NCBI GenBank assembly: GCA_002269645.1
Contig: NIVC01000199.1
Coordinates: 248,001 to 312,000, forward strand
Source of the DNA: Macrostomum lignano
Taxonomy: Eukaryota
Direction: 5' to 3'
Length of the DNA stretch: 64,000 nucleotides
This document shows positions 19,949 to 57,307 of this stretch, in pieces. The position numbers and the translations under genes were made by a program. Numbering within the stretch: position 1 is the first letter of the stretch; each line of letters begins with the position of its first letter. Under the pieces are notes generated by a model that was not told the DNA's origin, made no database searches, and saw nothing but the letters and a program-made list of their open reading frames with translations.

Positions 19949-22221
19949 ATGGACTCCGAGAAGATTTCCACATTCATGTCGGTGACATCGGCGGACGCAG
20001 AGCGCGCCCGCGCCTACTTGGAGGCTGCCCAGGGCGATCTGGACGCCGCCGTTGCGATGTTCTTCGCCGCAGGCGAGGAATCCGCCGAAGGTCAGCAGCC
20101 GCCGCCGCCGCCGATGAACACTTCGGCAAAAGCCACGGCGGTGGGAGCTGCCGAAGATCCGAGGAACCCGGCCTCCAGACCGCAGGAGAGGCAGCAGACA
20201 GCGGCTAGCGGCGGTCGTTTTGTCACCATGGACGCGCTGAGGTCACGAAAAGGTCACGGCGGCGGCGGCGGAGGCAGCGACGCTGAAGATCCTGACAGCG
20301 ACGAAGATGATGGAGCTCAAGCGTTCTACGTTGGTGGCTCTGAGAAAGGCGGCGGACAGCAGGTATTGACCCAGCTAGCGATGACCCAGGTGTTGACCCA
20401 GCTGTTGACCCAGCTAGCGATGACCCAGGTGTTGACCCAGGTGTAGACCCAGCTAGCGATGACCCAGCTGTTGACCCAGCTAGCGATGAACCATGTGTTG
20501 ATCCAGCTAACTATGACCTAGCTGTTGACCCAGGTGAAGACCCAGCTAGCGATGACCAGTTGTTGACCCAGGTAGCGATGGCCCAGGTGTTGACCCATCT
20601 GTCAGTGGTCATACATCAATACAAACCGAGCACAAAGTTGACCCAATCACCATGCTGACCCAAGCACCATGCTGACCCAGGCATCATGCTGACCCAAGCA
20701 CCATGCTGACCCAAGCATCATGCTGACCCAAGCACCATGCTGACCCAAGCATCATGCTGACCCAAGAACCATGCTGACCCAAGAACCATGCTGACCCAAG
20801 CACCAAGCTGACCCAAGAACCATGCTGACCCAAGAACCATGCTGACCCAAGCATCATGCTGACCCAAGAACCATGCTGACCCAAGCACCATGCTGACCCA
20901 AGCATCATGCTGACCCAAGCATCATGCTGACCCAAGAACCATGCTGACCCAAGCATCATGCTGACCCAAGCATCATGCTGACCCAAGCACCATGCTGACC
21001 CAAGCACCATGCTGACCCAAGCACCATGCTGACCCAAGCACCATGCTGACCCAAGCACCATGCTGACCCAAGCATCATGCTGACCCAAGCACCATGCTGA
21101 CCCAAGCACCATGCTGACCCAAGCATCATGCTGACCCAAGCATCATGCTGACCCAAGCATCATGCTGACCCAAGCACCATGCTGACCCAAGCATCATGCT
21201 GACCCAAGCATCATGCTGACCCAAGCACCATGCTGACCCAAGCATCATGCTGACCCAAGCACCATGCTGACCCAAGCATCATGCTGACCCAAGCACCATG
21301 CTGACCCAAGCATCATGCTGACCCAAGCACCATGCTGACCCAAGCACCGAGCCGCCAATCCTCACCCGCTCCGCACAGGTGCTCGGCCCTCCGGGTTCCC
21401 GTCGCGCCGACGCCGGTCGCATAGCAACCAGCCTGTTCGCCTCGGCCCGTCGTCACGGCGCCACTGAAGTCGGCTCGGCCGACGATCCCGGCCACGGAGC
21501 CGCAGGCGGGTTCGCCGCTTTTGCCGGCCGCGGCCTCCGACTGGACGCTGAGCAGCCGGCTGAGACCGCCGCCGCTGCTTTATCCGCAGCCTCTGCCAGT
21601 CAGCAGCAGCCGCAGCAGCCGGTCTGTCGAGTGCTGAAGCTCTGGTCAAACGGCGTCTCCATCGACGCCGGTCCGTTGCGCTCGTTCGAGGAGCCGGCCA
21701 CCAGGGAGCTGCTGCAGGCGGTGGCGCAGGGCCGAGTGCCTGCCGAGCTGCGCAGCGAGGCACGCGGCGCACGCGTGGACCTGCAGCTCGAGGATCACCG
21801 GGACACCGAATATCAAGCCGGAAGCAGCGGCAGCAGCAAGTTCAAAGCGTTCGCTGGCTCCGGCCAGGTGCTTGGAAGCCCCGCGCCAGCCGCTTCAGTG
21901 CAGGCTGCCCCCACCGCCGCTGCTGCCGACGCTGGCACAGGCAGTGGCGGGGCAGTGGCTGTGCCTGTGGACCCCAGCCAGCCCACCACCAACTTGAATG
22001 TCCGCCTGCCATCCGGCGGCCGGCCGCTGACCGTGACCCTGAACCAGGCCAAGCACACGGTTGCGGATCTGCGCAGGTTCGTGTCCGCCGAGAGGCCCGA
22101 GCTGGCGGACCGGACCTTCGTGTTCCTCACCACCTTCCCCACTGCCGAGATCGCTAACGAGGAGCAGACGCTGGAAGCTGCTGGTCTGGTGAATGCCGCT
22201 GTGGTTGTGAGGATTAAGTGA
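19949..22221 (+). CDS. NSFL1C: NSFL1 cofactor p47 (UBA-SEP-SHP-UBX); exons 19949-20362 and 21379-22221 (418 aa)
   Basis: UBA (ISTFMSVTSA...ARAYLEAAQGDLDAAVAMFF), QAFYVGGSEKGGGQQ|VLGPP, SEP (LKLWSNGVSIDAGPLRSFEEP), SHP (FKAFAGSGQVLGS) and UBX (FLTTFPT, TLEAAGLVNAAVV). Confidence 0.95.
20363..21346. repeat. GACCCAG/GACCCAAG-based minisatellites (15-bp CATGCTGACCCAAGC) filling the NSFL1C intron
   Basis: The array starts at the donor GT and ends ~30 nt before the acceptor. Confidence 0.95.
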
Positions 22222-23810: not shown

Positions 23811-25688
23811 TCAGACCCACAGAAAAAGTACACCCCGAATGAAGGCTCTGCAGATGGGGCACGTCTTCAGCGACTTGGCGCACACTGAGCAGCAGGCCAC
23901 GTGACCACAGTCCAGCAGCATGTTGTTCACCTCCTTGTCCATGCACACCTTGCACGTCTTCCAGTCGACCTGCTCACGAAATTTGGGCTGCGTATGATAA
24001 TTGTCCAACTTCCGTTGACAATGCTCATAAGGGTCCTGCGACTGCTTGCGCATGCGGCGGCTCTCAGTGAGCATGAAGTCGAGGAACAGCTCCGATGTGG
24101 CAAAGTCATCGCCTCGCTGTCTGAGATGCAGCTCTGTGAACAGTCTCACTTGCAGAGCGGAGAATCCGAGCTGAGTGAGCAGTCTCACAACGGGCAGGTC
24201 GGCTCTCGCCTTGATGTCTCTGGCCTCGACTCTGAACTCGACTCCAGGAGTGACTGCGAGAGCCTCGTTTGCATGACGGTGGCGATACAAGTTACTTAGT
24301 TCAATTGTGCTCATTTGACGGAGTGCAGCTGTCTGTTGCTGCACGGGAGGCGACAGTCGGTGCACCGCCTGTACAAAGTCGCTGCCTCGCTCCAACAACA
24401 CGTGAGGACACCGAGGTGACCACCTGGCGTGCTCAACCCACACATCATCGTCGCAGCTCCACTCGCTCATGCAGAGTCCGCAGCTGAAGCAGCAGGTCGC
24501 TCTCTCGGCTTCCGAGTAGAAGAAGCCCGTCTTTGCAAGCAAGTACACTGGCTGCTGAACGAGAGCCGAGTGCAGAGACTGCGACCGCGCTTGGTAGGTC
24601 TCGAACTGTGCGTGTTTGGCAGTCACACTCGATGGATCACTCTCGAGACTGTGCTGCAGAGCGGACAGGTTCGTGAGCGCTCTCTCGGAGCACGCAGATC
24701 TCGCTACTTCGCTCGACACTGGAAGCTGAGGACGCTTCATCATGTCGACTGCGATCAGCTCGTCGTCCACAACGCGTCCTGCACCAGCAGCAGCATTTGG
24801 TTCACGAGTTCCGCGTGTTGCCCACTCTTTCAGTCCAGCGAACTCCATCGGTGGTAGCTCAGCGACCAGCTTCATGCTCCAGTCTCCGTTCACCATCAGT
24901 GCTGCATCATCTGCAGTCTGATCACTGCACTGCATTGCCTCTACCAGCTTTGCTGACCTCGAGGCTCCTTCCGGCTCTCTGTGTTCTCGAGGCACGTTGC
25001 CGACTTCGACGAACAGAACGAACGGACAGGTGGAGAAGTGGCGTCTGTGAGCCTCTCGGACCTGCTCGCCCGCCTCCCAGTCCTTGAGCACACCCTTGCA
25101 GAATGCACACTTTACTCTGTCCGACTCCTGCAGGTAGAAGAATCCGTCAGCAGCCAGATCCGTCACTGACACCAGGTGAGCCGCTGTGAAGCTGGCATCT
25201 GGCAGGTGGAAGGACTGCCACCTGTTCTCCTCTCGTCTCATGTCCCACAGGTGTTGTGGAATCGAGGCCGGCATTCCACTCGTGTCCCATCGCTGATTGC
25301 GGAAGTCCAGAGTCTGCGGCACGGATGACGCTCTGCCACCAGGTGTGCTGTTGTTGTAGTACCGCAGTACCTTGCTCTTACCTGTTTGACTCCCAGAGTT
25401 AGCAAAATTTGGTTCTCTTCGCCCCAGCTGGCTTGCAATTTCGATCCTTTTTTTCAAAAAGCCGTGTTCCGAAGTCTGGAGTAGATTTGGCAGCAACTCG
25501 AAAATTCGTGAATCCTTTAGTAAAGTCGGATCTTGACTTGCATCCTGAGCAGATTTGCCTAGCTGTTGTTCGACTGTATTGAATGTTGCCATACGAACAC
25601 CTTTCTGCTGCATGCCTCGGTGCTGCAGGTGATTGATCAGACCTTGAATTCGCACGTCATTGTTGTTTGGCTGGTTACCACTGCTCAT
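23811..25688 (-). CDS. Inhibitor of apoptosis (2 BIR + RING), copy 1, intronless, 625 aa
   Basis: Two CX2CX16HX6C BIRs (CAFC...H...C and CFSC...HARWSPRC) and the C-terminal RING CKVCMDKEV...CGH...CPICR. Confidence 0.95.
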   Translation of the reverse strand: MSSGNQPNNNDVRIQGLINHLQHRGMQQKGVRMATFNTVEQQLGKSAQDASQDPTLLKDSRIFELLPNLLQTSEHGFLKKRIEIASQLGRREPNFANSGSQTGKSKVLRYYNNSTPGGRASSVPQTLDFRNQRWDTSGMPASIPQHLWDMRREENRWQSFHLPDASFTAAHLVSVTDLAADGFFYLQESDRVKCAFCKGVLKDWEAGEQVREAHRRHFSTCPFVLFVEVGNVPREHREPEGASRSAKLVEAMQCSDQTADDAALMVNGDWSMKLVAELPPMEFAGLKEWATRGTREPNAAAGAGRVVDDELIAVDMMKRPQLPVSSEVARSACSERALTNLSALQHSLESDPSSVTAKHAQFETYQARSQSLHSALVQQPVYLLAKTGFFYSEAERATCCFSCGLCMSEWSCDDDVWVEHARWSPRCPHVLLERGSDFVQAVHRLSPPVQQQTAALRQMSTIELSNLYRHRHANEALAVTPGVEFRVEARDIKARADLPVVRLLTQLGFSALQVRLFTELHLRQRGDDFATSELFLDFMLTESRRMRKQSQDPYEHCQRKLDNYHTQPKFREQVDWKTCKVCMDKEVNNMLLDCGHVACCSVCAKSLKTCPICRAFIRGVLFLWV

Positions 25689-31684: not shown

Positions 31685-33658
31685 TCAGTCCCGCAGAAAA
31701 ACTACACCCCGAATAAAGGCCCTGCAGATGGGGCACGTCTTCAGCGACTTGGCGCACACTGAGCAGCAGGCCACGTGACCACAATCCAGCAGCATGATGT
31801 TCACCTCCTTGTCCATGCACACCTTGCACGTCTTCCAGTCGGTTGTGTCTCGGTGTCTCGGCTGTTGGTTCAGAGACTCTCGAATCTCCGACATCCTGCT
31901 CTCGAAGAACGCCTCCGGGTCCTGCGACTGCTTGCGCATGCGGCGGCTCTCAGTGAGCATGAAGTCGAGGAACAGCTCCGATGTGGCAAAGTCATCGCCT
32001 CGCTGTCTGAGATGCAGCTCTGTGAACAGTCTCACTTGCAGAGCGGAGAATCCGAGCTGAGTGAGCAGTCTTACAACGGGCAGGTCGGCTCTCGCTTTGA
32101 TGTCTCTGGCCTCGACTCTGAACTCGACTCCAGGAGTGACTGCGAGAGCCTCGTCTGCGCGACTGCTGCGGACTGCGGACCCGTCGACAGTCGCAGCACC
32201 AGCTGATGCAGTTGAGTCCATCTGTACCGATGCAGTGTGACGCTGAGCAGAGGCGCCACAAGTCGGGTGCTGCACGGGAGGCGACAGTCGGTGCACTGCC
32301 TGTACAAAGTCGCTACCTCGCTCCAACAACACGTGAGGACACCGAGGTGACCACCTGGCGTGCTCAACCCACACATCATCGTCGCAGCTCCACTCTCTCA
32401 TGCAGAGTCCGCAGCTGAAGCAGCAAGTCGATCTTTCGGCTTCCGAGTAGAAGAAGCCCGCCTTTGCAAGCAAGTACACTGGCTGCTGAACGAGAGCCGA
32501 GTGCAGAGACTGCGACCTCGCTTGGTAGGTCTCGAACTGTGCGTATTTGGCAGTCACACTCGATGGATCACTATCGAGACTGTGCTGCAGAGCGGACAGG
32601 TTCGTGAGCGCTCTCTCTGAGCACGCAGATCTCGCTACCTTGCTCGACACTGGAAGCTGAGGACGCTTCATCATGTCGAAAGCGACCAGCTCGTCGTCCA
32701 CAACGCGTCCTGCATTCGTTCCACGGGTTCCGCGTGTCGCCAGCGCCCACTCGTTTAGTCCAGCGAACTCCATCGGTGGTAGCTCAGCGACCAGCTTCAT
32801 GCTCCAGTCTCCGTTCACCATCACTGCTGCATCATCTGCAGTCTGATCACAGCATTGCACTGCCTCTACTATCTTTGCTGAAATCAAGACTCTTTCTGGC
32901 TCTCTGTGTTCTCGAGGCACGTTGCCGACCTCGACGAACAGAACGAACGGACAGGTGGAGAAGTGGCGCCTGTGAGCCTCTCGGACCTGCTCGCCCGCCT
33001 CCCAGTCCTTGAGCACACCCTTGCAGAATGCACACTTTACTCTGTCCGACTCCTGCAGGTAGAAGAATCCGTCAGCAGCCAGATCCGTCACTGACACCAG
33101 GTGAGCCGCTGTGAAGCTGGCATCCGGCAGGTGGAAGGACTGCCACCTGTTCTCCTCTCGTCTCATGTCCCACAGGTGTTGTGGAATCGAGGCCGGCATT
33201 CCACTCGTGTCCCATCGCTGATTGCGGAAGTCCAGAGTCTGCGGCACTGATGACGCTCTGCCACCAGGTGTGCTGTTGTTGTAGTACCGCAGTACCTTGC
33301 TCTTACCTGTCTGATTCACTGAGTTAGCCGGATTTTGTTCCCTTCGCCTCAGCTGGCTTGCAATTTCGATCCTTTTTTTCGAAAACCCGTGTTCCGAAGC
33401 CTGGAGTAGATTTGGCAGCAACTCAAAAGTTCGTGAATCTTTTAGTAAAGTCGGAATTTCTCCTTTGCTGGCACCGTCTGTGGAAATATTCAGTCCTGAG
33501 AGTTCCCCGAACTTTGCTTTGTTTCTTGCTGCCGTGTTCTCCTCTCTTCCAGATCTTTGACCGGATTTCAGCCAATTTTTTGTGTCGTCGACATAAAATT
33601 TCTTTCTTCTGGGGATTATTGATTGAAAATTTGAGTCTTGGTTTTGAAGTTGAGCCAT
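31685..33658 (-). CDS. Inhibitor of apoptosis (2 BIR + RING), copy 2, intronless, 657 aa
   Basis: Same BIR and RING motifs; near-identical to copy 1 from PTLLKDSR onward apart from divergent patches. Confidence 0.95.
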   Translation of the reverse strand: MAQLQNQDSNFQSIIPRRKKFYVDDTKNWLKSGQRSGREENTAARNKAKFGELSGLNISTDGASKGEIPTLLKDSRTFELLPNLLQASEHGFSKKRIEIASQLRRREQNPANSVNQTGKSKVLRYYNNSTPGGRASSVPQTLDFRNQRWDTSGMPASIPQHLWDMRREENRWQSFHLPDASFTAAHLVSVTDLAADGFFYLQESDRVKCAFCKGVLKDWEAGEQVREAHRRHFSTCPFVLFVEVGNVPREHREPERVLISAKIVEAVQCCDQTADDAAVMVNGDWSMKLVAELPPMEFAGLNEWALATRGTRGTNAGRVVDDELVAFDMMKRPQLPVSSKVARSACSERALTNLSALQHSLDSDPSSVTAKYAQFETYQARSQSLHSALVQQPVYLLAKAGFFYSEAERSTCCFSCGLCMREWSCDDDVWVEHARWSPRCPHVLLERGSDFVQAVHRLSPPVQHPTCGASAQRHTASVQMDSTASAGAATVDGSAVRSSRADEALAVTPGVEFRVEARDIKARADLPVVRLLTQLGFSALQVRLFTELHLRQRGDDFATSELFLDFMLTESRRMRKQSQDPEAFFESRMSEIRESLNQQPRHRDTTDWKTCKVCMDKEVNIMLLDCGHVACCSVCAKSLKTCPICRAFIRGVVFLRD

Positions 33659-48050: not shown

Positions 48051-50376
48051 ATGGACACAAGCAGCAAGAGCAATGCAGCTAACTTTCCGATTCGAAGTCA
48101 AGAAGATCTTATTGGCCTGATGTCTATGGCAAAGATCTCTACCTCGGAGGTGCAGCCAGTTGTGCAAAGCGTTCACTTTGCCAATGAACTGCTTGATGAT
48201 CAAGTGATGCTGCTAGAGCTTGATGAAGCTCTGTTAGCTAAACTGATCAAGGGAGAAGATCGACTGGAGGTGAAGGGTTCCATTGACCAGGAGGCTGTGC
48301 TGTGCACCAGCGAATGCACTTATGAAGTGCGCGAAGTTGAAACTTCTAATAGTTTGATGTTGTCAACTGACACTCTGATGCCACCGGCTACCGCCTCCGC
48401 TGAGGGACTGGATGGAGGAGGCATTCAGGTTAGAGAGCTGGAGTTTGTTGTTTTTAATTGCTTCAAGTTTGCTTTTAACCAGCAAGTTTGTGCCCGAGGA
48501 TAAACCTGATTTCTGTAGAATTCTCCTGCAAAGGATGCAGAGCATTTTTCCCAGTGATAAACGCTTCTGACTCTCGCGCCACGGACCCCTGGTTCGATTC
48601 TTGGCTAAAGGGGTTGTTTCACAGTCCATGAGGGCCAACCCCCAAGGCACAGAGAGTGTACATACATGCGCAACTGCTGGCCGACATGGCCGATCTGGCC
48701 ACCGTAAATTGTGGTGGACCAGGGGTAAGTCGCAAAAATGCCCACCCCAAAGAATACGGACGTAGTACTAATTAGATAACGAGGCATTTAGCCCTTGTAA
48801 GACAGTAATAGTTACTCCTGCCGTTTACTCAAAATTGCGTTAATTTGCTTAAGTTCAGTTCATTGGTTAGTCGCATTTTTGGTCACAAAGTAAGTCGCAT
48901 AGCCGGTGTAAATCAGGTGGTTTAGGCATGTATGATTGGCGCGCTTGCATATGCTCACTGCTCAGGATTCATTCAGCGGAATGGGCAGATGGGAAATAGA
49001 TGAAACTCACCTGTCGCTCAGGTGCGCCGCAGCTCAATAGCCGCAGTGAAGCACAGCTACGCCGAGCTCAGACGATTGAAACCCGGGCCAGCCTCTCTGC
49101 GCTGCCTGCTGCCCCAGTCTGCCAGCTATCGCGGCCTAGTTGAAGAGCAGGAGGCGGATGCCGATGCTGCAGCTGCCGTAGCCGCCGAGTCGCCTACAAT
49201 GGAACAGCTGAGAACTACTGCTCAGGTATAAAGTTTATATAGCCAGGCGTTCTTTAAGCTATTTGGTATGCTATCAGTAGCGTAGTACTGCACTTTTAGC
49301 CACATCTATAGACTGGTGAAACTGCAAAATAACTCGACATGCTGCTCAAGACGTATAACATTTTTTTACATTGTAAGCATTGTTTTAAAAATAAGAATGT
49401 TGTACCCAGAAAGTTTGTTAATATGGTCAGCAGAAGGCTTCAGTATCAACTAATGTGTATCAGCCTGGATGCATCAGCGAGTAGCAAAGTTCAGGGCAGA
49501 CCTCGAAATAAAAATTACCTTTAAGTGAGCAGGACAGGACAGACGGACACGAAGACAGACAGGCACACAGACAGGCAGACAGACAGGCAGACAGACAGGC
49601 CGACAGACATACAGGCAGACAGATAGAGACTAAGACAGACAGACAGACAGACACCAAGACAGACAGACACTAGACAGACAGACAGACACAGACAGACACA
49701 CAGACACTAAGACAGACAGACAGACAGACAGACAGACAGGCAGGCAGACAGGCAGGCAGGCAGACACACAGACAGACAGACAGACAGGCAGACAGACAGA
49801 CAGACAGACAGACACACAGACACTAAGACAGACAGACAGACAGACAGGCAGGCAGGCAGGCAGACAGACAGACACACATACACTAGACAGACAGACAGAC
49901 ACACAGATAGACACACAGACACTAAGACAGACAGTCAGACAGACAGACAGGCAGGCAGGCAGACAGACAGACACACAGACACTAAGACAGACAGACAGAC
50001 ATACAGACAGACAGACAGACAGACACACAGACACTAAGACAGACAGACAGACAGACAGACAGACAGGCAGACAGACACACAGACACTAAGACAGACAGAC
50101 AGATAGACAGACACCAAGACAGACAGACACACAGACACTAAGACAGACAGACACACAGACAGACAGACAGACACACAGACACTAAGACAGACAGACAGAC
50201 AGACAGACAGATAGACAGACAGACAGGCAGACAGACAGACAGACAGGCAGACAGACAGACACACAGACAGACAGACAGACACACAGACACTAAGACAGAC
50301 AGACAGACAGACAGATAGACAGACAGACAGACAGACAGGCAGACAGACAGACAGGCAGACAGACACACAGACACTA

Positions 50377-50408
<32 letters not shown>

Positions 50409-50664
50409 TCACAGACACTAAGACAGACAGACAGACAGGCAGGCAGACAGACAGACACACAGACACTAAGACAGACAGACAGGCAGGCAGACAGACAGAC
50501 AGACAGGCAGACAGACAGACAGACAGGACAGACAGATAGAGACTAAGACAGACAGCAAACAGACAGACACACAGACACTAAGACAGACAGACGGACAGAC
50601 AGACAGACACACAGACACTAAGACAGACAGACAGATAGACAGACAGACAGTCAGAAAGACAGGC

Positions 50665-50697
<33 letters not shown>

Positions 50698-53693
50698 CAC
50701 AGACACTAAGACAGACAGATAGACAGGCAGACAGACAGACAGGCAGACAGGCAGACAGACAGACACACAGACACTAAGACAGACAGACAGACAGACAGAG
50801 AGCAGCTCAGTGATAAACGCGTGACTCCCGCGCCATGACCCCTGGTTCGATTCCCTGCGCAGCCACATTCATTTGGGACTTATGCACGAAAATTGCCGAG
50901 CGGGTTGTTGTGCGATTCACAACACCCACGAGGCGCAGAGAGTTCCTGACGATTAGAAGTCAAAAAGGCCGCTGTACAGTCGCGTACAGTATTGGCGCGC
51001 TTGCATGTGCTCAGGAGTCAGGGGATGAGGCAGAATTCCTCTGCGAATATTGATTTTTATCTTCTTGCCCGAAGATGAGTGACTCCGAGCTCTCCAGACT
51101 GCTGGACTCTGTCAACGCCATCGAGCTGGATGGCAGGGTTCGCCTGCTGCACGAAGATCTGCCACAGCAGGTGCTGTCGGCCCTGATGTCTGCAGCAGTT
51201 GAGAATGACTGGACTCTGGCCGCCCTGCCAGTTGAAGACGCCTGCGCCTCTCTGGCGGACCTGTACGATCCGAGGGTGACGCGGCGGGTCATTCAGCTGC
51301 ACTCAGTGCAGTCTGGCGTCCTTGGAGACTGCGTTGAGTTGGACTCCAAGCTGGTGAGGAGAAGCTTTTGATTGTGTGCATTGGTAATCTATGCATTGCT
51401 GCTTGTGCCAGTGCTGGCCCTACGGGTTTTACTGAAACTCGCGGAGAGAGCACTGGTTGCCTCTGCCATTTCTCTCTCTTCATTTCACTCTCCCTCTTCA
51501 TTCCCTCTCTTTCTGTCCTCTTAATTCCCTCTCTGTCACTCTTCATTCTCTCTCTTCCCGCTGTCACTCCTCTCACTCCCTCTCCCGCTGTCACTCCTCT
51601 CACTCCCTCTCCCGCTGTCACTCCTCTCACTCCCTCTCCCGCTGTCACTCCTCTCACTCCCTCTCCCGCTGTCACTCCTCTCACTCCTTCTCCCGCTGTC
51701 ACTCCTCTCACTCCCTCTCCCGCTGTCACTCCTCTCACTCCCTCTCCCGCTGTCACTCCTCTCACTCCCTCTCCCGCTGTCACTCCTCTCACTCCCTCTC
51801 CCGCTGTCACTCCTCTCACTCCTTCTCCCGCTGTCACTCCTCTCACTCCCTCTCCCGCTGTCACTCCTCTCACTCCCTCTCCCGCTGTCACTCCTCTCAC
51901 TCCTTCTCCCGCTGTCACTCCTCTCACTCCCTCTGTCACTCCTCTCGATTCCCCTTCCTCTGTCACTCCTCTCAATTCCCCTTCCTCTGTCACTCCTCTC
52001 ACTCCCTCTGTCACTCCTCTCACTCCCTCTGTCACTCCTCTCACTCCCTCTGTCACTCCTCTCACTCCCTCTGTCACTCCTCTCAATCCCCCTCCCTCTG
52101 TCACTACTTATCACTGTCACTCCTCTCCCTCCCTCTTGTCTCCCCTCCTCTCTCTTGCTCTACCTCCCTCTGTCTCACTCCCTAGGCCTACTCAGTATAT
52201 GTGGCCTGCAGTATTCTAAATTTATTATTAAATCCCCACAACGCTCATCACCAGATCAGTCGCACATTCGGGCACTTCCTGCTTCGGCTCGGATCAGCCT
52301 ACGATCTGTCAGTGTTCCTGCCGCTGTGGCAGGAGGCGGTCTCGGACGCTGCCACTGTCAGCTTGGATCATCTAGCTGGCCTCTGTTTAACATCTTCCAG
52401 CCCAGGAGACTGCAGCGAGTCTGCGGACTCCATTACTGTCCGATATTTCCCAGCTGATCTGCTGCCTGACAACCATGCTGCTAGGTTTGCCGAGCTGTTC
52501 AAGGTGAGCGTCTCTGCCTAGCTACTTCTGAGTCTACTTCTGAATCTATATCCCTAGCTACTTGTGAGTCTACCCCTAGCTACTTGTGAGTCTACCCCTA
52601 GCTACTTGTGAGTCTACCCCTAGCTACTTGTGAGTCTACCCCTAGCTACTTGTGAGTCTACCCCTAGCTACTTGTGAGTCTACCCCTAGCTACTTCTGAG
52701 TCTACCCCTAGCTACTTGTGAGTCTACCCCTAGCTACTTCTGAGTCTACCCCTAGCTACTTCTCAGTCTACCCCTATCTACTTCTCAGTCTACTCCTAGC
52801 TACTACTCAGTCTACCCCTAGCTACTTCTCAGTCTACCCCTAGCTACTTCTCTGTCTACCCCTAGCTACTTCTCTGTCTACTCCTAGCTACTACTCAGTC
52901 TACCAATAGCTACTTCTCACTCTACTCCTAGCTACTACTCAGTCTACTCCTAGCTAATACTCAGTCTACTACTAGCTACTTCTCAGTCTACTCCTAGCTA
53001 CTACTCAGTCTACTCCTAGCTACTACTCAGTCTACTCCTAGCTACTACTCAGTCTACCCCTAGCTACTTCTCAGTCTACTCCTAGCTACTACTCAGTCTA
53101 CCCCTAGCTACTTCTCAGTCTACTCCTAGCTACTACTCAGTCTACCCCTAGCTACTTCTCAGTCTACTCCTAGCTACTACTCAGTCTACCCCTTGTTCTT
53201 CTGAGTCTATCCCCTCTAGCTACCTACTTCCTACCTCTCCCAGTCTAGCCACCTGTCAGTCTCACTCTCTTTACTATCTACCTCTCAGTATGCTACTTAG
53301 CTATATCTCAAACTACTTCCATCTCCTTTTCTCCTCCCAGACTACTCGACCTCTCATTCTACGTCTTAGCCTACCTCCTAGCTACATCTCGATATAATCT
53401 AGATTTCTCTTAGTCTACCTTAGTTTCTACCTGTCTACTTCTCAATTACCTTGAGAAGCTACTTTAAACTCTATGGGTGTGTTATGTAGGTAAGCCATTA
53501 ATTAATGTCTCACTACACTACTCAAATGTGCCAAATTACTCGTACTTCGCAGGCCAGGGCCAAGTGGACATTGGAAGATTTGCAGCCCTATCTAGAGTCG
53601 GTCTGTTACGGCAAGGTAACGCCCGGCTCGTTGCTGGCTCGATACGCTCGAGTGTCCAACGCCAACGGTAGAAAGTATTACTCGGCTAGGTGA
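48051..53693 (+). CDS. DSCC1: Sister chromatid cohesion protein DCC1; exons 48051-48428, 49022-49225, 51075-51353, 52255-52503, 53553-53693 (416 aa)
   Basis: [52 protein letters not shown]|[22 protein letters not shown]; all junctions are phase 0. Confidence 0.93.
48545..48995 (+). mobile_element. tRNA-headed SINE plus the second module, DSCC1 intron 1
   Basis: B-box GGTTCGATTC; shares GGCCAACCCCCAAGGCACAG..AGTGTACAT with 753-1140 and the module with 1155-1320. Confidence 0.65.
49525..50800. repeat. Compound (GACA)n/(GGCA)n microsatellite, DSCC1 intron 2
   Basis: About 1.27 kb, directly visible. Confidence 0.97.
50800..51045 (+). mobile_element. tRNA-headed SINE copy
   Basis: AGCTCAGTGATAA A-box-like, GGTTCGATTCC B-box, and the core GGCCGCTGTACA / GCGCGCTTGCATGTGCTCAGG. 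Confidence 0.65.
51545..52095. repeat. 27-bp minisatellite CCCGCTGTCACTCCTCTCACTCCCTCT, DSCC1 intron 3
   Basis: About 14 full units plus shorter derivatives. Confidence 0.95.
52517..53200. repeat. 22-bp minisatellite CTTGTGAGTCTACCCCTAGCTA, DSCC1 intron 4
   Basis: About 30 copies with a polar variant gradient. Confidence 0.95.
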
Positions 53694-54284
53694 AGCTGAC
53701 GCATTCCAATTCTATTTAACTCTAAGCAGTTGCTTAATGCAAGTGCAGTCCATGGTTCATTTTCTTCAAGCGCTGAAAAACTCCATTAGTTTGTCTAGGA
53801 AGCTTTCTGTATGTGGCGGTTTACTTTACGCCTGCAACACGGACGATATATCTACGGCCTTATTTAGAACTGGGGCATATAACCCTGTGTGTACTTCCTC
53901 AAAAAGCGGGAGATCTCCTTGCTGCTATCCTAGCTTTTTTCTTGACGTGAACGATTTTGTCAATTCCAAGTGGCATTTTTGTGGTTTTCTACTGCTGCCT
54001 GTGCTATCAGGGCTAGCAACAAGTTTAAAGCTTTTAAATTCTACATTTAATAATTGCATTTCAATATCGTTGCAATGCTATTCATAATATAACAGCTAAA
54101 AATTGATAAACTGTATCTGTTGGTGTTTCTTTGTTACCGGTTTTTGTCGTTCCTCATTTAGTTTCAAAGTTTTTTGGTGTATTTCATTCTCCTGTAATCT
54201 CCTCGTTTACTTAATACTTTTGCAACAGATTCTTTATTGGTATCTCCATCTCTAACAAAAAACCTCGATAATCTCCACGAAAGT

Positions 54285-54405
54285 ACCTTGATTATCCATG
54301 CAAAAGTACCTCAATAATCCACACCAAAGTACCTCGACAATCCCCACCAAAGTAGCTCGATAATTCACACCAAAGTACCTCGATAATCCCCTTTAAAGTA
54401 CCTCT
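54285..54405. repeat. Short ~23-bp tandem repeat AAAGTACCTCGATAATCC...
   Basis: About 5 copies between DSCC1 and the next gene. Confidence 0.75.
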
Positions 54406-54510
54406 ATAGTTGCAGTCGTACCCCTGAATCTATCTCAAGAAACAGATCTCCCAAGTACCTGAGAATGGAAAACTCAACTGCCTTTTATGCATGTCCTAGC
54501 AACCGCGGTT

Positions 54511-57307
54511 ATGCAGCGCCATCAACACCAGCAGGCGGAATCGCCCAGTCTCAATCGAACCTTTGCTCTGATTGGCTGCGCCACTGCGGCCTGTTTGGTT
54601 GCCGTGTGCGCAGCTGCGGCCGTCGCTTCCGGCGTATTGCCTTCCTTTCGACTGGAATTGTCCACGTGCTCATTGGAAGAGACTACTAGCAGTAGTCTAA
54701 AAGACCGATTGAGCATTCAGCAGCAGTTGCAGAACGTTCGGCGCGACTTGACGAAGGGCCTGTCCAGCTGCGCTGCGGAAGCTTCCGCTGGTAGCGGGGA
54801 GACCGGAGCCCAGTTGGAGTCGGTTCGGTTTGCATTGATCGAATTGCGTCACAGACTAGATCGGCTGTCTTCGGATGTGGCCGAATTGACAGTTGCTATG
54901 CGAAGGCAGCAATCGGTGGCGACACCGGAAGTTAAGCCGAAAGAAAAGCAAGCACCAATCAGGCCTCTGCCAGAGTCTAATGCGGCTCTTACTCAGTCTA
55001 AAAAAGCTGCTAAAGAGAAACCGGAAGTAGCTAAGACTAAGCCGGAAGTAGTTAAAACTAAACCGGAAGTAGCTAAAGCTAAACCGGAAGTAGTTAGAAC
55101 TAAACCAGACATAAAAACCACCGATGCATCTGCTTCAAAAGCGCCCCCGGCGCCGCAAAGAATCCAGCCAAATGCTGGCGATAGAGCGACCCCGCCGATT
55201 CGGGTGATGTCGCAGGTCGACATGCGCCAAGCGGAACTCGACAAGCAGCCGATGGTGCGAGCTGGCAGCGGCGAACTGCTTGGTCGACAGGTGCTGCACG
55301 GCATTAAGCCGAAGAAGATCTTTCAAGATGGCAGACGAATTCCGCCGGTGAAGTTGGAGAGAATCATTGCTGCACCTGGCAGCTCTGTGCAGGTAAAGCT
55401 GAGACAGACTGGCAGACAGGCAGAAAGACAGAAAGACAGACAGACAAAGAATACTATGACGGACGCGAATGCGGCACTAATACGAAATCTCAACAAATTT
55501 CATGCCGCATGCACTTGAAGGGATCTATTTTTAGTCGTACTCCTGTATTACCTCGACTATAAGTAAACAACCTTTGTGATTGCATCATCAGATTAAGTCA
55601 GGCGAATCCGCCAACAGTAAAACTTTCTACCAACTCCGAAAACCCCTCTTCTCACCTGTCAGGTATACATGTTCGACGAGTTGTTATCGGATGTGGAATC
55701 AGACAGCCTGGCTGCCGTTCATTTCAAACGGTTGGAGGCTCTGTCTAACAGGCAGCCAATTGTCTGTTTCGATTCGGAAGCTACAATGCAACGGCTCGTA
55801 GCTGATGAGGCCGGAGTTGTACGCAGAGGGGTGAGCTATTGAGGTTTGGTTTGGTTTTAGCTTCCATAGCTAGCAGCTTGATATTTCTGCATTGGTGAGT
55901 CATGCTCTTGGTTCTCGATCTGGCCCTTGAGGTAAAAAAGTGTGTCGACCCCTGATTTATACAGAATTTTATTATTCAAATTAGAAGCTTCCCATTAAGA
56001 CTTTCCATTAAGAAGCAGAGCTAAAATTCAGGGAATGAGGCAGGTACTATTTTATCTATCTATCTTGACCAACCCGAAACAGCTCTCGTCAGCTGATTTC
56101 ACCGCCGGCACGCGTTGCCTGAACGCGAGTCTGTCCGCAAAAGCTGCTAGTTGGCTTCGCTTTAATTGGACCCGATCGACTGTGTTCTACCCTGGCGAGA
56201 GCCGGTTCACCGCCGGCCCACTGGCTGACAGATTCCTCAAATCCATGGGCTTGCCAGCTAGTCATGCCGGACGCTTGGACGTCACCAGCCATCCTCTTGG
56301 CCAGGGATTCTCTGAACAACTCGATTGTAAAGCTAAAAATGGTGCCAGCGGTGAAATTTTTGCCACCGTGCGGGTGTTTCTGGACACGGTGACGCGTGGT
56401 GGAGAATTTCACCTGCCCAAGCTGGGTATTTGGCTGCGACCGAGGAAGTCTAGGGCGCTGCTTGTGACGCAACTGGCACCAGATACCGGAGCTTGCGAGC
56501 CAGCTGCTGCCTACAATTCTAGCTGGGTGAGTTGCTATGAACTCATATTAAAGTAGCACCCGTGAAAGTTCTTCAGTAGCGTCCTTAAACAGCAGTAGGG
56601 CATGTGACCCTTAATTGTGACCCTCCAATCTGACCGTCAGATAAACGGTTAATAACGTGACGATTAAATAAACGGTTACTATTGTGACCATCAATGTGAC
56701 TCTCCGATGTGACCGTCACCTATACAAATTTGTTCGTTTTTGACGTTTATGTTTTTTATCGAGTCAACCTAACACATAACGGTCACAATGACGGTCTTTT
56801 CATCTTTTGACGGTTACAAATTTGATTAGCAATGTAAAATTTTTTAACGGTCACCCACTTTATACGGAGAAGTATCGTTGTGACTGCCACTTTTAATTGC
56901 ATCTGGGGGCACACAAATAGTATTTTATGTTACTTGTCAATAGTGAAGGATTCTTTCTAAAAAACCAAACTGCCTTTTGAAGTGCCAAAATGTCAATCAT
57001 AACTTCGAATTAAGTCAGCCTTGACACCAAGGGGTTATTTTTCATTTTCAGCCTGTGACGCTGCTATACTTGTGCTGTAATTAATGAGTAAATATTTTCC
57101 ATGAAAATCAATTCGATGCAGGTGCAAACAGGTCGTTCAATAACGCTGACGCAACGATTTCATTACGCTACATTTCCTGGAATTGGCCAGCGGCCAAGCG
57201 AACCGGCACTGCCAATCCGGCCGGCCGACACCCCGGCTGTGATGTGCGACTCCACCGCGCCGCCCTGTCGCTGGAGCGACGAATGGACGGACGAGCATCT
57301 GATCTGA
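54511..57307 (+). CDS. Type II membrane prolyl-4-hydroxylase-fold (2OG-Fe(II) dioxygenase-like) protein with degenerate active site; exons 54511-55392, 55663-55830, 56083-56526, 57122-57307 (559 aa)
   Basis: N-terminal TM, coiled coil and KPEVAKT repeats, then VYMFDELLSDVE, ATVRVFLDTVTRGGEFHLPKLGIWLRPRKSRALL and VQTGRSITLTQRFH, which match the P4H double-stranded beta-helix. All junctions are phase 0. Confidence 0.8.
56595..56860. repeat. MITE-like relic with inverted TGTGACC(G)/CGGTCAC subterminal motifs
   Basis: Several TGTGACC on the left and ACGGTCAC/ACGGTTAC on the right. Confidence 0.4.

What the first reader, a model, noticed from the sequence alone, without database searches (positions are those of the whole stretch)
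54511..57307. Membrane-anchored prolyl-4-hydroxylase-fold protein that has lost its catalytic residues (pseudoenzyme candidate)
Seen: the fold motifs are intact, but the expected HxD iron motif reads Q-L-D-C (Gln at 56317), the distal His position reads AAY (Tyr at 56512), and the 2-oxoglutarate-binding Lys of GxKW reads GRS (Ser at 57137). Known: P4H-type 2OG dioxygenases need His-x-Asp...His plus a basic residue. The ORF is unbroken across four phase-0 exons, with a TM anchor, coiled coil and a Lys/Pro KPEVAKT stalk. Inference: it is maintained as a non-catalytic substrate-binding, chaperone or decoy protein in the ER/Golgi or on the cell surface.
Basis: partly seen in the sequence, partly recalled or inferred. 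Interest (0 to 1): 0.7.

Follow-up and report, generated by a model that had tools for sequence, protein, structure and literature searches.

The report
Catalytically dead membrane-anchored prolyl hydroxylase homologue
A flatworm (Macrostomum lignano) gene encodes a membrane-anchored protein that keeps the shape of a prolyl 4-hydroxylase enzyme but has lost the residues needed to bind iron, co-substrate and target proline, yet is still kept intact by selection, so it is a credible but not extraordinary "dead enzyme".

Summary
The four-exon, phase-0 gene (54511-57307, +) equals the RNA-seq-derived GenBank model PAA88232.1 of Macrostomum lignano. It encodes 559 aa: a TM anchor, two long helices, a disordered Lys/Pro/Ala stalk with KPEV repeats, and a 300-aa C-terminal domain.

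That domain is predicted with pLDDT 91.5, and its best structural matches are all prolyl 4-hydroxylases. It belongs to an uncharacterised type-II-membrane P4H-like family found from sponges to amphioxus and in protists. In that family 104 of 126 hits that cover all four positions carry His-Asp-His-Lys. The flatworm reads Gln-Asp-Tyr-Ser.

It has also lost the equivalents of Cr-P4H-1 Tyr140, Arg161 and Trp243. Three M. lignano copies agree on Tyr and Ser; the first-His position is Gln, Gln or Arg.

Two copies differ by 12 non-synonymous and 17 synonymous changes (dN/dS 0.23, p=1e-4), so this is not a decaying pseudogene.

The pseudoenzyme reading is supported. The "substrate-binding decoy" idea is not, because the proline clamp is gone too. 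Similar degenerate members occur in a rotifer and in rotifer-like contigs. Function remains inferred. Interest is moderate.

The parts
54511..55392 (+). Exon 1 (residues 1-294): start codon, cytoplasmic tail, TM anchor, helical stalk, disordered stalk, start of the P4H-like domain
   Evidence: Identical to annotated CDS PAA88232.1, which starts 15 nt upstream as 'partial'.
54562..54639 (+). Signal-anchor / TM helix (about residues 18-43), type II orientation inferred
   Evidence: Kyte-Doolittle 19-mer maximum 2.39; AF2 helix 13-42. Homologues have the same N-terminal anchor.
54694..54915 (+). Two long helices (residues 62-93 and 98-135); candidate coiled coil or oligomerisation stalk
   Evidence: AF2 full-length model, pLDDT 63-79. 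All a/d heptad positions are hydrophobic in 100-127.
54916..55269 (+). Disordered Lys/Pro/Ala-rich stalk (residues 136-253)
   Evidence: pLDDT below 50 over 137-257. Composition A17 P17 K17 of 118 residues. This is the most variable part among the three M. lignano copies.
55018..55101 (+). Four tandem 7-aa repeats KPEV[AV][KR][TA] (residues 170-197); a fifth unit is present in copy A0A1I8IFB9
55270..57304 (+). P4H-like luminal/extracellular domain (residues 254-559, spliced over exons 1-4): N-terminal beta-meander PKKIFQDGRRIPP, alpha/beta subdomain, double-stranded beta-helix core, C-terminal disulfide hairpin CRWSDEW
   Evidence: AF2 pLDDT 91.5, pTM 0.89. Foldseek top hits are all P4Hs. Family profile against PDB gives E=1e-32.
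55663..55830 (+). Exon 2 (residues 295-350)
   Evidence: tblastn self-check.
56083..56526 (+). Exon 3 (residues 351-498), most of the beta-helix core
56308..56310 (+). Phe426, at the position of family-invariant Tyr (Cr-P4H-1 Tyr140)
56317..56319 (+). Gln429 (CAA) at the HxD histidine position; Arg (CGA) in the second genomic copy L004
56323..56325 (+). Asp431, the only retained member of the metal triad
   Evidence: invariant D178.
56356..56358 (+). Ile442 at the position of the substrate-proline clamp Arg (Cr-P4H-1 Arg161; 97% Arg in intact family members)
56512..56514 (+). Tyr494 (TAC) at the distal histidine position
57122..57307 (+). Exon 4 (residues 499-559 plus TGA stop)
57137..57139 (+). 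Ser504 (TCA) at the 2OG-binding lysine position
57155..57157 (+). Arg510 at the position of the family-conserved Trp (Cr-P4H-1 Trp243)

Best explanation
This is a real, transcribed Macrostomum lignano gene (BOX15_Mlig007966g2). It encodes a type-II membrane protein: a short cytoplasmic tail, a signal anchor, a helical and then disordered Lys/Pro-rich stalk, and a C-terminal prolyl-4-hydroxylase-fold domain that faces the secretory lumen or the cell exterior.

The domain is the flatworm ortholog-like member of an uncharacterised, ancient family of membrane-anchored P4H-like proteins. That family occurs in sponges, molluscs, nemerteans, annelids, echinoderms, hemichordates, cephalochordates, tunicates and several protists. 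Its other members keep the His-x-Asp...His iron triad and the 2OG-binding Lys.

In M. lignano the pocket has been dismantled. Both His, the Lys, and the Tyr, Arg and Trp that position the target proline are replaced. The protein therefore cannot act as an Fe(II)/2-oxoglutarate prolyl hydroxylase, and it probably does not hold a proline peptide in the canonical way.

The fold framework has been kept under purifying selection. This covers six Cys, the Gly and Pro positions, the N-terminal subdomain, the PKKIFxDGRRIPP beta-meander and the CRWxDEW hairpin.

Shown: the gene model, the homology, the fold prediction, the residue losses, and selection since the recent genome duplication.

Inferred: topology and location; inactivity, which has not been assayed; and the present role. 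My best guess for that role is a non-catalytic scaffold or binding module that works through the retained outer surfaces and an oligomerising stalk rather than through the old active site.
For: - Gene model and identity with the annotated, RNA-seq-derived CDS.
- Sequence homology to solved P4Hs: E=5e-6 for the protein alone, E=1e-32 for the family profile.
- AF2 model has pLDDT 91.5. The best Foldseek matches are B. anthracis P4H, Chlamydomonas Cr-P4H-1, PBCV-1 P4H, human C-P4H-II and P4H-TM, with TM-scores up to 0.75 on the target.
- Family census: 4472 hits, 46 below 1e-30. HDHK is present in 104 of the 126 hits that cover all four columns; the window reads QDYS.
- 23 of 56 family-conserved columns are changed, and 20 of those lie in core positions 159-258. 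All six Cys are kept.
- Per-region identity: the beta-helix core is 0.34-0.36 identical to Aplysia or Tubulanus, against 0.61-0.64 among intact members. The N-subdomain is 0.45-0.47, against 0.46-0.54.
- Mapping onto Cr-P4H-1 His143/Asp145/His227/Tyr140/Arg161/Trp243.
- Selection: 12 non-synonymous and 17 synonymous differences between the window and L004, dN/dS 0.23, p=1.1e-4.
- Among three copies, 3.6% of domain positions vary against 10.7% of anchor plus stalk positions.
- Q429 is Arg in copy L004, so that position is not a conserved ligand.
Against: - No biochemical test exists, so inactivity is inferred from sequence.
- Model coordinates could not be inspected, so a re-formed site from migrated residues is not strictly excluded. 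Candidates are His420, Arg503 and Arg510, which now sit on pocket strands.
- The selection signal comes from only 29 differences between very recent duplicates. Within the C-terminal domain alone it is weak (7 N to 7 S, omega 0.33, p=0.04), and 5 of the 7 replacements cluster at residues 427-463.
- Divergence between the copies is mosaic: introns 1-2 are almost identical while exons differ by about 2%. This points to gene conversion or a chimeric assembly and complicates rate estimates.
- No ortholog from another flatworm was found, so the age of the loss is unknown.
- I could not determine whether M. lignano also has an intact paralog.
- The proposed scaffold role has no direct evidence.
Confidence: 0.7

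Rival explanations
1. Canonical decoy or substrate trap. The dead domain still binds proline-rich substrates of the family in the normal peptide groove, without turnover, and so acts as a chaperone, lectin-like reader or competitor.
For: The fold and overall groove architecture are predicted to be preserved. Asp431 is retained. Many pseudoenzymes keep ligand binding (review PMC10211241, listed; abstract only read).
Against: The residues that hydrogen-bond the target proline in the Cr-P4H-1-peptide complex are replaced: Arg161 equivalent to Ile442, Tyr140 equivalent to Phe426, Trp243 equivalent to Arg510. The pocket strands are the most divergent region relative to orthologs. They are also the most variable part of the domain among M. 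lignano copies: 5 of 11 variable positions lie at 427-463, and position 441 has three states.
Confidence: 0.1
2. A young unprocessed pseudogene or gene in decay. Catalysis was lost, constraint is relaxed, and the ORF has simply not been hit yet.
For: - The branch is long, with 33-43% identity to homologues that are 54-68% identical to one another.
- The Pfam HMM no longer detects it.
- Replacements between copies cluster around the dead site.
- Within the domain alone omega is 0.33 with borderline significance.
Against: - Whole-gene dN/dS is 0.23, p=1.1e-4.
- Three copies all have intact 4-exon ORFs with canonical splice sites.
- All six Cys and most Gly/Pro framework positions are retained.
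- The domain is three times less variable than the stalk among copies.
- The gene model derives from transcript evidence.
Confidence: 0.12
3. Still an enzyme. It would have a re-wired active site built from migrated residues or a different metal, or a different chemistry carried out on the same fold.
For: Asp431 is kept. New His420, Arg503 and Arg510 lie on pocket strands. Migrated catalytic residues are a known pitfall in calling pseudoenzymes (PMC10211241 abstract).
Against: - No second His or carboxylate appears at or next to the triad positions.
- The Gln at the first-His position is Arg in a sister copy.
- The family-invariant Thr of the GGET motif, the Lys and the Tyr residues are all lost together.
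- To my knowledge no 2OG oxygenase uses a Gln/Asp/Tyr site; this rests on memory and was not searched exhaustively.
Confidence: 0.06
4. Artefact: a sequencing, assembly or annotation error produced the non-canonical residues or the gene model.
For: The Mlig_3_7 assembly is redundant, and divergence between the two copies is mosaic.
Against: Tyr494, Ser504 and Asp431 are identical in three separately assembled copies from two assemblies. Twenty-three conserved columns are changed, not three, and no single-base error explains that. The splice sites are canonical and match the annotation.
Confidence: 0.02

Closest known systems
Uncharacterised membrane-anchored P4H-like family (e.g. Aplysia californica LOC101861812, Tubulanus polymorphus LOC141901865, Branchiostoma floridae LOC118425129, Sycon ciliatum LOC135808376)
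   Same: Same architecture: N-terminal anchor, disordered charged stalk, 300-aa C-terminal domain. Identity is 33-43% over the whole domain. It shares six invariant Cys, conserved N-glycosylation sequons, the PKKIFxDGRRIPP beta-meander (with gastropods and the nemertean) and the CRWxDEW C-terminal hairpin.
   Different: Those proteins keep HTDC...H...K and hit Pfam PF13640. The flatworm protein reads QLDC...Y...S, gets no Pfam hit, has a beta-helix core about twice as divergent, and has a helical segment in the stalk.
Algal/plant type-II-membrane prolyl 4-hydroxylases (Chlamydomonas Cr-P4H-1, PDB 2JIG/3GZE)
   Same: Monomeric-type P4H catalytic fold; Foldseek E about 1e-10 to 1e-11; family profile E=1e-27. 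Plant members are N-terminally anchored in the secretory pathway (from general knowledge).
   Different: The equivalents of His143, His227, Lys237, Tyr140, Arg161 and Trp243 are all replaced. There are extra N-terminal strands and a C-terminal Cys hairpin. No hydroxylase activity is expected.
Bacillus anthracis P4H (PDB 3ITQ, 5IAX, 5HV0)
   Same: Closest solved structure by both sequence (E=5e-6) and fold (E=4e-12, TM-score 0.75 on the target).
   Different: It is a soluble bacterial enzyme with an intact triad and no anchor, stalk or disulfide framework.
Human transmembrane prolyl 4-hydroxylase P4H-TM (PDB 6TP5) and collagen P4H alpha subunits (7ZSC)
   Same: Animal P4H-fold proteins in the secretory pathway. 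P4H-TM is also N-terminally membrane-anchored. Foldseek E about 1e-8 to 1e-9.
   Different: There is no EF-hand insert (P4H-TM). There is no P4Ha_N or peptide-substrate-binding domain (collagen P4H): no Pfam hits at all. The relationship is only distant, and the catalytic residues are absent.
Pseudoenzymes within the 2OG-oxygenase superfamily (e.g. the JmjC protein JARID2; from general knowledge)
   Same: A double-stranded beta-helix fold is retained while the Fe/2OG ligands are lost, and the protein is kept for a non-catalytic role.
   Different: A different subfamily (P4H rather than JmjC), a different compartment (secretory/extracellular rather than nuclear), and a function that is unknown here.
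Other degenerate members of the same family: Seison nebaliae KAI3386608.1 (EDYS), metagenomic eukaryote proteins P0021 (RDNK), P0026 (YDYP), P0032 (HDYK)
   Same: They show independent-looking loss of triad or Lys residues in the same family. Tyr often replaces the distal His. P0026 sits 1.2 kb upstream of an intact HDHK paralog.
   Different: They are only 28-33% identical to the flatworm protein, whereas it is 41-43% identical to the intact gastropod and nemertean proteins. The NJ grouping with them has 58% bootstrap and is probably long-branch attraction. Their sets of substitutions differ.

Membership tests
Active Fe(II)/2-oxoglutarate prolyl 4-hydroxylase (P4Hc / Pfam PF13640 2OG-FeII_Oxy_3) | Double-stranded beta-helix fold superimposable on solved P4Hs | tested here: met
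   AF2 pLDDT 91.5. The top 34 Foldseek PDB hits are all P4Hs, with E down to 4e-12.
Active Fe(II)/2-oxoglutarate prolyl 4-hydroxylase (P4Hc / Pfam PF13640 2OG-FeII_Oxy_3) | Significant match to the family HMM | tested here: not met
   No Pfam family at E<=10 for the window protein or its paralog. The Aplysia homologue scores 48.8 bits, E=1.4e-12. Homology is still detectable by phmmer against PDB P4Hs, E=5e-6.
Active Fe(II)/2-oxoglutarate prolyl 4-hydroxylase (P4Hc / Pfam PF13640 2OG-FeII_Oxy_3) | His-x-Asp...His iron-binding facial triad | tested here: not met
   It reads Gln429-Leu-Asp431...Tyr494. The first position is Arg in copy L004.
Active Fe(II)/2-oxoglutarate prolyl 4-hydroxylase (P4Hc / Pfam PF13640 2OG-FeII_Oxy_3) | Basic residue (Lys) on strand VIII binding the 2OG C5 carboxylate | tested here: not met
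   Ser504 occupies the position of the family-invariant Lys, which aligns with Cr-P4H-1 Lys237 by counting from His227 in the alignment.
Active Fe(II)/2-oxoglutarate prolyl 4-hydroxylase (P4Hc / Pfam PF13640 2OG-FeII_Oxy_3) | Substrate-proline positioning residues (Cr-P4H-1 Tyr140, Arg161, Trp243) | tested here: not met
   Phe426, Ile442 and Arg510.
Active Fe(II)/2-oxoglutarate prolyl 4-hydroxylase (P4Hc / Pfam PF13640 2OG-FeII_Oxy_3) | 2OG-dependent hydroxylation activity | not testable with these tools
   Needs recombinant protein and an assay.
Uncharacterised membrane-anchored P4H-like family (Aplysia LOC101861812-like) | Homology over the whole 300-aa domain, including the family-specific N-terminal strands and C-terminal extension | tested here: met
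   41% identity to Aplysia over residues 265-554, E=2e-62. Profile alignment covers positions 1-306.
Uncharacterised membrane-anchored P4H-like family (Aplysia LOC101861812-like) | Six invariant cysteines and the CRWxDEW C-terminal hairpin | tested here: met
   C329, C362, C432, C488, C540 and C547 are invariant in 33 sequences. CRWSDEW is present.
Uncharacterised membrane-anchored P4H-like family (Aplysia LOC101861812-like) | N-terminal membrane anchor followed by a long low-complexity stalk | tested here: met
   for the window protein. Homologue sequences show the same layout, though for those it was judged by eye only.
SUN domain protein (UniRef's name for the paralog A0A1I8IFB9) | C-terminal Sad1/UNC (SUN) domain | tested here: not met
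   No Sad1_UNC or any other Pfam hit. No SUN-domain structure appears among the listed 50 best Foldseek PDB hits. The name is not supported.
Pseudogene | Disrupted ORF or splice sites, or neutral evolution (dN/dS about 1) | tested here: not met
   The ORF and GT-AG sites are intact in the copies examined. dN/dS is 0.23, p=1.1e-4.
Collagen P4H alpha subunit / P4H-TM | P4Ha_N plus peptide-substrate-binding domain (collagen P4H), or an EF-hand insert (P4H-TM) | tested here: not met
   No such Pfam domains. The relationship is only a distant fold match.

The most novel reading that the evidence does not exclude
The membrane-anchored P4H-like family may have a second, non-enzymatic function carried by its conserved outer surfaces: the N-terminal beta-meander, the disulfide framework and the C-terminal hairpin. 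That function would be enough to keep the protein alive after catalysis is lost. This would explain why dead versions arose repeatedly in fast-evolving spiralians: Macrostomum, Seison, and rotifer-like contigs where a dead copy sits beside a live one. In M. lignano the dead form may be the only family member, which would make it a natural separation-of-function allele for an otherwise unstudied, sponge-to-amphioxus animal protein family.
Probability: 0.2. Interest if true: 0.55.

Novelty: new variant of a known kind. Interest (0 to 1): 0.35.

Why it matters
If the reading is right, this protein is a naturally inactivated member of a widespread but unstudied family of membrane-anchored animal prolyl-hydroxylase-like proteins. 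It sits in an organism where RNAi and transgenesis are available.

It could show what the fold does apart from hydroxylation. It also flags the intact family, found in molluscs, echinoderms, amphioxus and sponges, as candidate non-collagen prolyl hydroxylases of the secretory pathway.

On its own it is one more pseudoenzyme. Such proteins are common in large enzyme superfamilies, so the value is moderate rather than high.

Tried and rejected
1. A word-index homology search with the C-terminal domain alone returned nothing. With the 33-sequence profile it returned only two already-known hits. This was unproductive, so I could not list further flatworm homologues or test for an intact M. lignano paralog.

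2. An exact-sequence look-up of the window protein and of P0001 found no record. The DNA of a second copy was obtained through P0165 instead.

3. The NJ tree groups M. lignano with the other degenerate members at 58% bootstrap. I rejected this as evidence of a shared ancient loss. Raw identity is highest to the intact gastropod and nemertean proteins, all of these sequences are long branches, and lineage-specific motifs (GIW, PKKIFxDGRRIPP) are shared with gastropods and the nemertean.

4. UniRef's name 'SUN domain-containing protein' is rejected.

5. Literature searches found nothing on this gene or on dead P4Hs. The terms were Macrostomum plus prolyl 4-hydroxylase, the locus name, and pseudoenzyme plus P4H. 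Supplementary tables of two M. lignano expression papers do not contain Mlig007966.

6. A Fisher test for excess replacements in residues 424-465 against the rest of the gene was not significant, p=0.22.

7. There is no second copy of the gene within the window.

Full report
**What is in the sequence**

The exons are 54511-55392, 55663-55830, 56083-56526 and 57122-57307. All introns are GT-AG and phase 0, and the product is 559 aa. A tblastn of this protein back on the window finds only these four exons, so there is no second copy in the window.

The window is 100% identical to Macrostomum lignano scaffold NIVC01000199.1 of assembly GCA_002269645.1. The GenBank protein PAA88232.1 (BOX15_Mlig007966g2, P0164) is exactly this model plus five residues upstream of the ATG. 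That annotation was built from RNA-seq transcript assemblies (StringTie/TACO plus de novo transcripts, cut at trans-splice and poly(A) sites; PMC5730564). The exon structure therefore rests on transcript evidence. The annotated neighbours are Dcc1 upstream and Dicer downstream.

**The observation**

The codons at 56317, 56512 and 57137 are CAA (Gln429), TAC (Tyr494) and TCA (Ser504).

phmmer against PDB sequences aligns residues 390-509 with Bacillus anthracis P4H at E=5e-6. It places Gln429 under the His of HYD, Tyr494 under the distal His, and Ser504 under the Lys of GEKW. The closest named homologue outside M. lignano is Aplysia californica LOC101861812 (41% identity over the C-terminal 290 residues). 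It reads HTDC...H...GSKY in the same columns and matches Pfam PF13640 at E=1.4e-12. The two M. lignano proteins tested get no Pfam hit even at E<=10.

The N-terminal features also hold:
- A hydrophobic anchor, with a 19-mer Kyte-Doolittle maximum of 2.39 at 20-38 and an AF2 helix at 13-42.
- Two long helices at 62-93 and 98-135, with a perfect heptad pattern at 100-127.
- A disordered Lys/Pro/Ala stalk at 137-257.
- Four KPEV[AV][KR][TA] repeats.

**The family**

An exhaustive HMMER search with a profile of the M. lignano and Aplysia domains found 4472 proteins at E<=1e-3 and 46 representative clusters at E<=1e-30. Many of these align over the whole 306-position profile.

Source names show the following taxa:
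- gastropods (Aplysia, Lymnaea, Elysia, Patella, Haliotis) and a cephalopod;
- a nemertean (Tubulanus) and an annelid (Owenia);
- echinoderms (Diadema, Antedon, Apostichopus);
- Saccoglossus, Branchiostoma and Ciona savignyi;
- the sponge Sycon;
- the rotifer Seison;
- Picozoa and unnamed metagenomic protists.

None has a characterised function; the names are 'uncharacterized', 'Fe2OG dioxygenase domain-containing' or automatic 'P4HA'.

A 33-sequence alignment has 11 invariant columns, including six Cys. Its profile hits solved P4Hs at E=1e-32 (B. anthracis), 1e-27 (Chlamydomonas Cr-P4H-1) and 9e-27 (human P4HA2).

I counted along that alignment from the residue numbers given in PMC5684110 (His143, Asp145, His227, Tyr140, Trp243, Arg161) and in bioRxiv 10.1101/2024.03.26.586753 (Arg161 and Tyr140 contact the peptide). 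The family columns H176, D178, H241, K251, Y173, R189 and W257 correspond to Cr-P4H-1 His143, Asp145, His227, Lys237, Tyr140, Arg161 and Trp243.

**How degenerate the flatworm protein is**

Across all retrieved sequences, the four columns read HDHK in 104 of the 126 that cover them. The window and its paralog read QDYS.

Of 56 columns that are at least 80% conserved among intact members, the window keeps 33 and changes 23. Twenty of the 23 lie in the beta-helix core (domain positions 159-258). The changes include Y167H, Y173F, H176Q, T177L, R189I, Y196F, T206F, F208L, H241Y, K251S and W257R. All six Cys and most Gly/Pro positions are kept.

By region, the core is the best conserved part among intact members: Aplysia-Tubulanus 0.64, Aplysia-Branchiostoma 0.61. 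It is the worst conserved part in M. lignano (0.34-0.36). The N-terminal subdomain is almost as conserved as among intact members, 0.45-0.47 against 0.46-0.54. The loss of constraint is therefore focused on the catalytic core, not spread over the protein.

**Fold**

AlphaFold2 with the 33-sequence alignment gives pLDDT 91.5 and pTM 0.89. Gln429 is at the end of strand 426-429, Tyr494 is at the start of 494-496, and Ser504 is at the start of 504-512. These are the canonical places for the triad and the Lys.

The best Foldseek matches against the PDB are exclusively prolyl hydroxylases: B. anthracis P4H, Cr-P4H-1, PBCV-1 P4H, human C-P4H-II and P4H-TM. More distant PHD-type enzymes follow. No SUN domain appears, so the UniRef name of the paralog ('SUN domain-containing protein') is not supported.

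Coordinates are not exposed to scripts. I could not check in 3-D whether other residues could rebuild a site.

**Is it maintained?**

The assembly contains a second copy (L004, NIVC01003819.1, protein PAA49665.1) with the same Dcc1 and Dicer neighbours. UniProt holds a third copy (A0A1I8IFB9) from another assembly. All three are intact and keep Asp431, Tyr494 and Ser504. Position 429 is Gln, Gln, Arg and position 441 is Glu, Ala, Gly. A Gln that can become Arg is not behaving as a metal ligand.

Codon comparison of the window with L004 gives 17 synonymous and 12 non-synonymous differences. Nei-Gojobori dN/dS is 0.23, and the binomial p against neutrality is 1.1e-4. For the N-terminal half omega is 0.16. 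For the C-terminal domain omega is 0.33, p=0.04.

Among the three proteins, 10.7% of anchor plus stalk positions vary, including one repeat-unit indel. Only 3.6% of domain positions vary, and five of those eleven lie at 427-463.

This argues for purifying selection on the gene since the recent duplication, with the old pocket as its loosest part. There are three caveats:
- Only 29 differences are available.
- Divergence is mosaic. Introns 1-2 differ at 1 of 522 sites, while the exon differences cluster at 54538-54859 and 56311-56509. This suggests gene conversion or a chimeric assembly of homeologs.
- No ortholog from another flatworm was available to measure older constraint.

**Mechanism**

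It is shown that the residues for iron, 2OG and proline positioning are gone while the framework is kept. Enzymatic inactivity is therefore the most likely state. This is an inference; nothing was assayed.

That is weakened because the proline clamp (the Arg161 and Tyr140 equivalents) and the Trp243 equivalent are replaced as well.

What selection still holds in place is:
- the N-terminal beta-meander PKKIFQDGRRIPP, identical in 12 of 13 residues to gastropods;
- the alpha/beta subdomain;
- the disulfide framework;
- the C-terminal CRWxDEW hairpin.

My best guess, at low confidence, is a non-catalytic scaffold or binding module displayed on a dimerising helical stalk in the secretory lumen or at the cell surface, acting through these outer surfaces. 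The type-II topology and luminal location are inferred from the anchor, the six Cys and the conserved sequons N364 and N378.

**Other degenerate members**

- Seison nebaliae reads EDYS.
- Three metagenomic eukaryote clusters read RDNK, YDYP and HDYK/HDYA.
- In locus L002 the YDYP gene lies 1.2 kb upstream of an intact HDHK paralog.

An NJ tree groups M. lignano with these sequences at 58% bootstrap. However, M. lignano is most similar to the intact gastropod and nemertean proteins, 41-43% against 28-33%. I read the grouping as long-branch attraction and the losses as independent, but this is not settled.

**Verdict**

The finding is real, and the pseudoenzyme label is well supported by sequence, fold prediction and selection. 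It is a new, previously undescribed dead variant within the P4H family. No paper in the searchable library mentions it. Dead members are a familiar phenomenon in large enzyme superfamilies, and the function here is unknown. Interest is moderate (0.35).

**Unproductive steps**

- Two word-index homology searches.
- Literature and supplement searches.
- The exact-sequence look-ups.

Noticed in passing
window 54511-57307 versus L004 10001-12795: Divergence between the two M. lignano copies is mosaic. Introns 1 and 2 differ at 1 of 522 sites. Exons differ at 29 of 1680 sites, clustered in 54538-54859 and 56311-56509. This suggests gene conversion between homeologs or a chimeric assembly.
   Followed up: partly
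window 56527-57121 (intron 3): Intron 3 is rich in repeated GTGACC/GGTCAC-type motifs. It contains a segment of about 250 bp (56649-56895) that does not align with the second copy L004, so it may be a small inserted or rearranged element.
   Followed up: no
window 54262-54408: A 23-bp tandem repeat (6.4 copies, unit ACCTCGATAATCCCCACCAAAGT) lies directly upstream of the gene start. A 22-bp array lies at 53000-53215, near the 3' end of the annotated Dcc1 gene model (L003 3514-9198, i.e. window about 48009-53693).
   Followed up: no
window 54487-54510: There is an in-frame ATG at 54487, 24 nt upstream of the annotated start. The GenBank CDS is marked partial and starts at 54496, just before an AG at 54498-54499 that could be a trans-splice acceptor. 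An older gene model (A0A1I8I0C7, 991 aa) fuses the upstream Dcc1 gene to the second copy of this one (it matches L004, not the window). This is consistent with both genes lying in one transcriptional unit.
   Followed up: partly
window 23811-25688 and 31685-33658 (minus strand): Two long uninterrupted ORFs (625 and 657 aa) each carry BIR domains plus a C-terminal RING finger. They look like a tandem pair of IAP-like genes.
   Followed up: partly
window 37615-38763 (minus strand): An ORF of 382 aa has Mos1-type HTH and mariner transposase (partial DDE) domains, so it is a mariner-family transposon copy.
   Followed up: partly
window 21379-22221 (+): An ORF has SEP and UBX domains (p47/NSFL1C-like cofactor).
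   Followed up: no
L002 3039-3950 and 5121-6008: In a metagenomic eukaryotic contig (ENA ERZ19050867), a degenerate family member (YDYP) sits 1.2 kb upstream of an intact HDHK paralog. This is a dead/live tandem pair.
   Followed up: partly
window 56515-56523 (residues 495-497): An N-x-S sequon (NSS) lies immediately after Tyr494, on the strand that normally carries the distal His. It is not present in intact homologues such as Aplysia, and glycosylation there is untested.
   Followed up: no
P0001 (UniRef A0A1I8IFB9): The public name 'SUN domain-containing protein' for the paralog has no support from Pfam or from the fold search. It looks like an automatic mis-annotation.
   Followed up: yes
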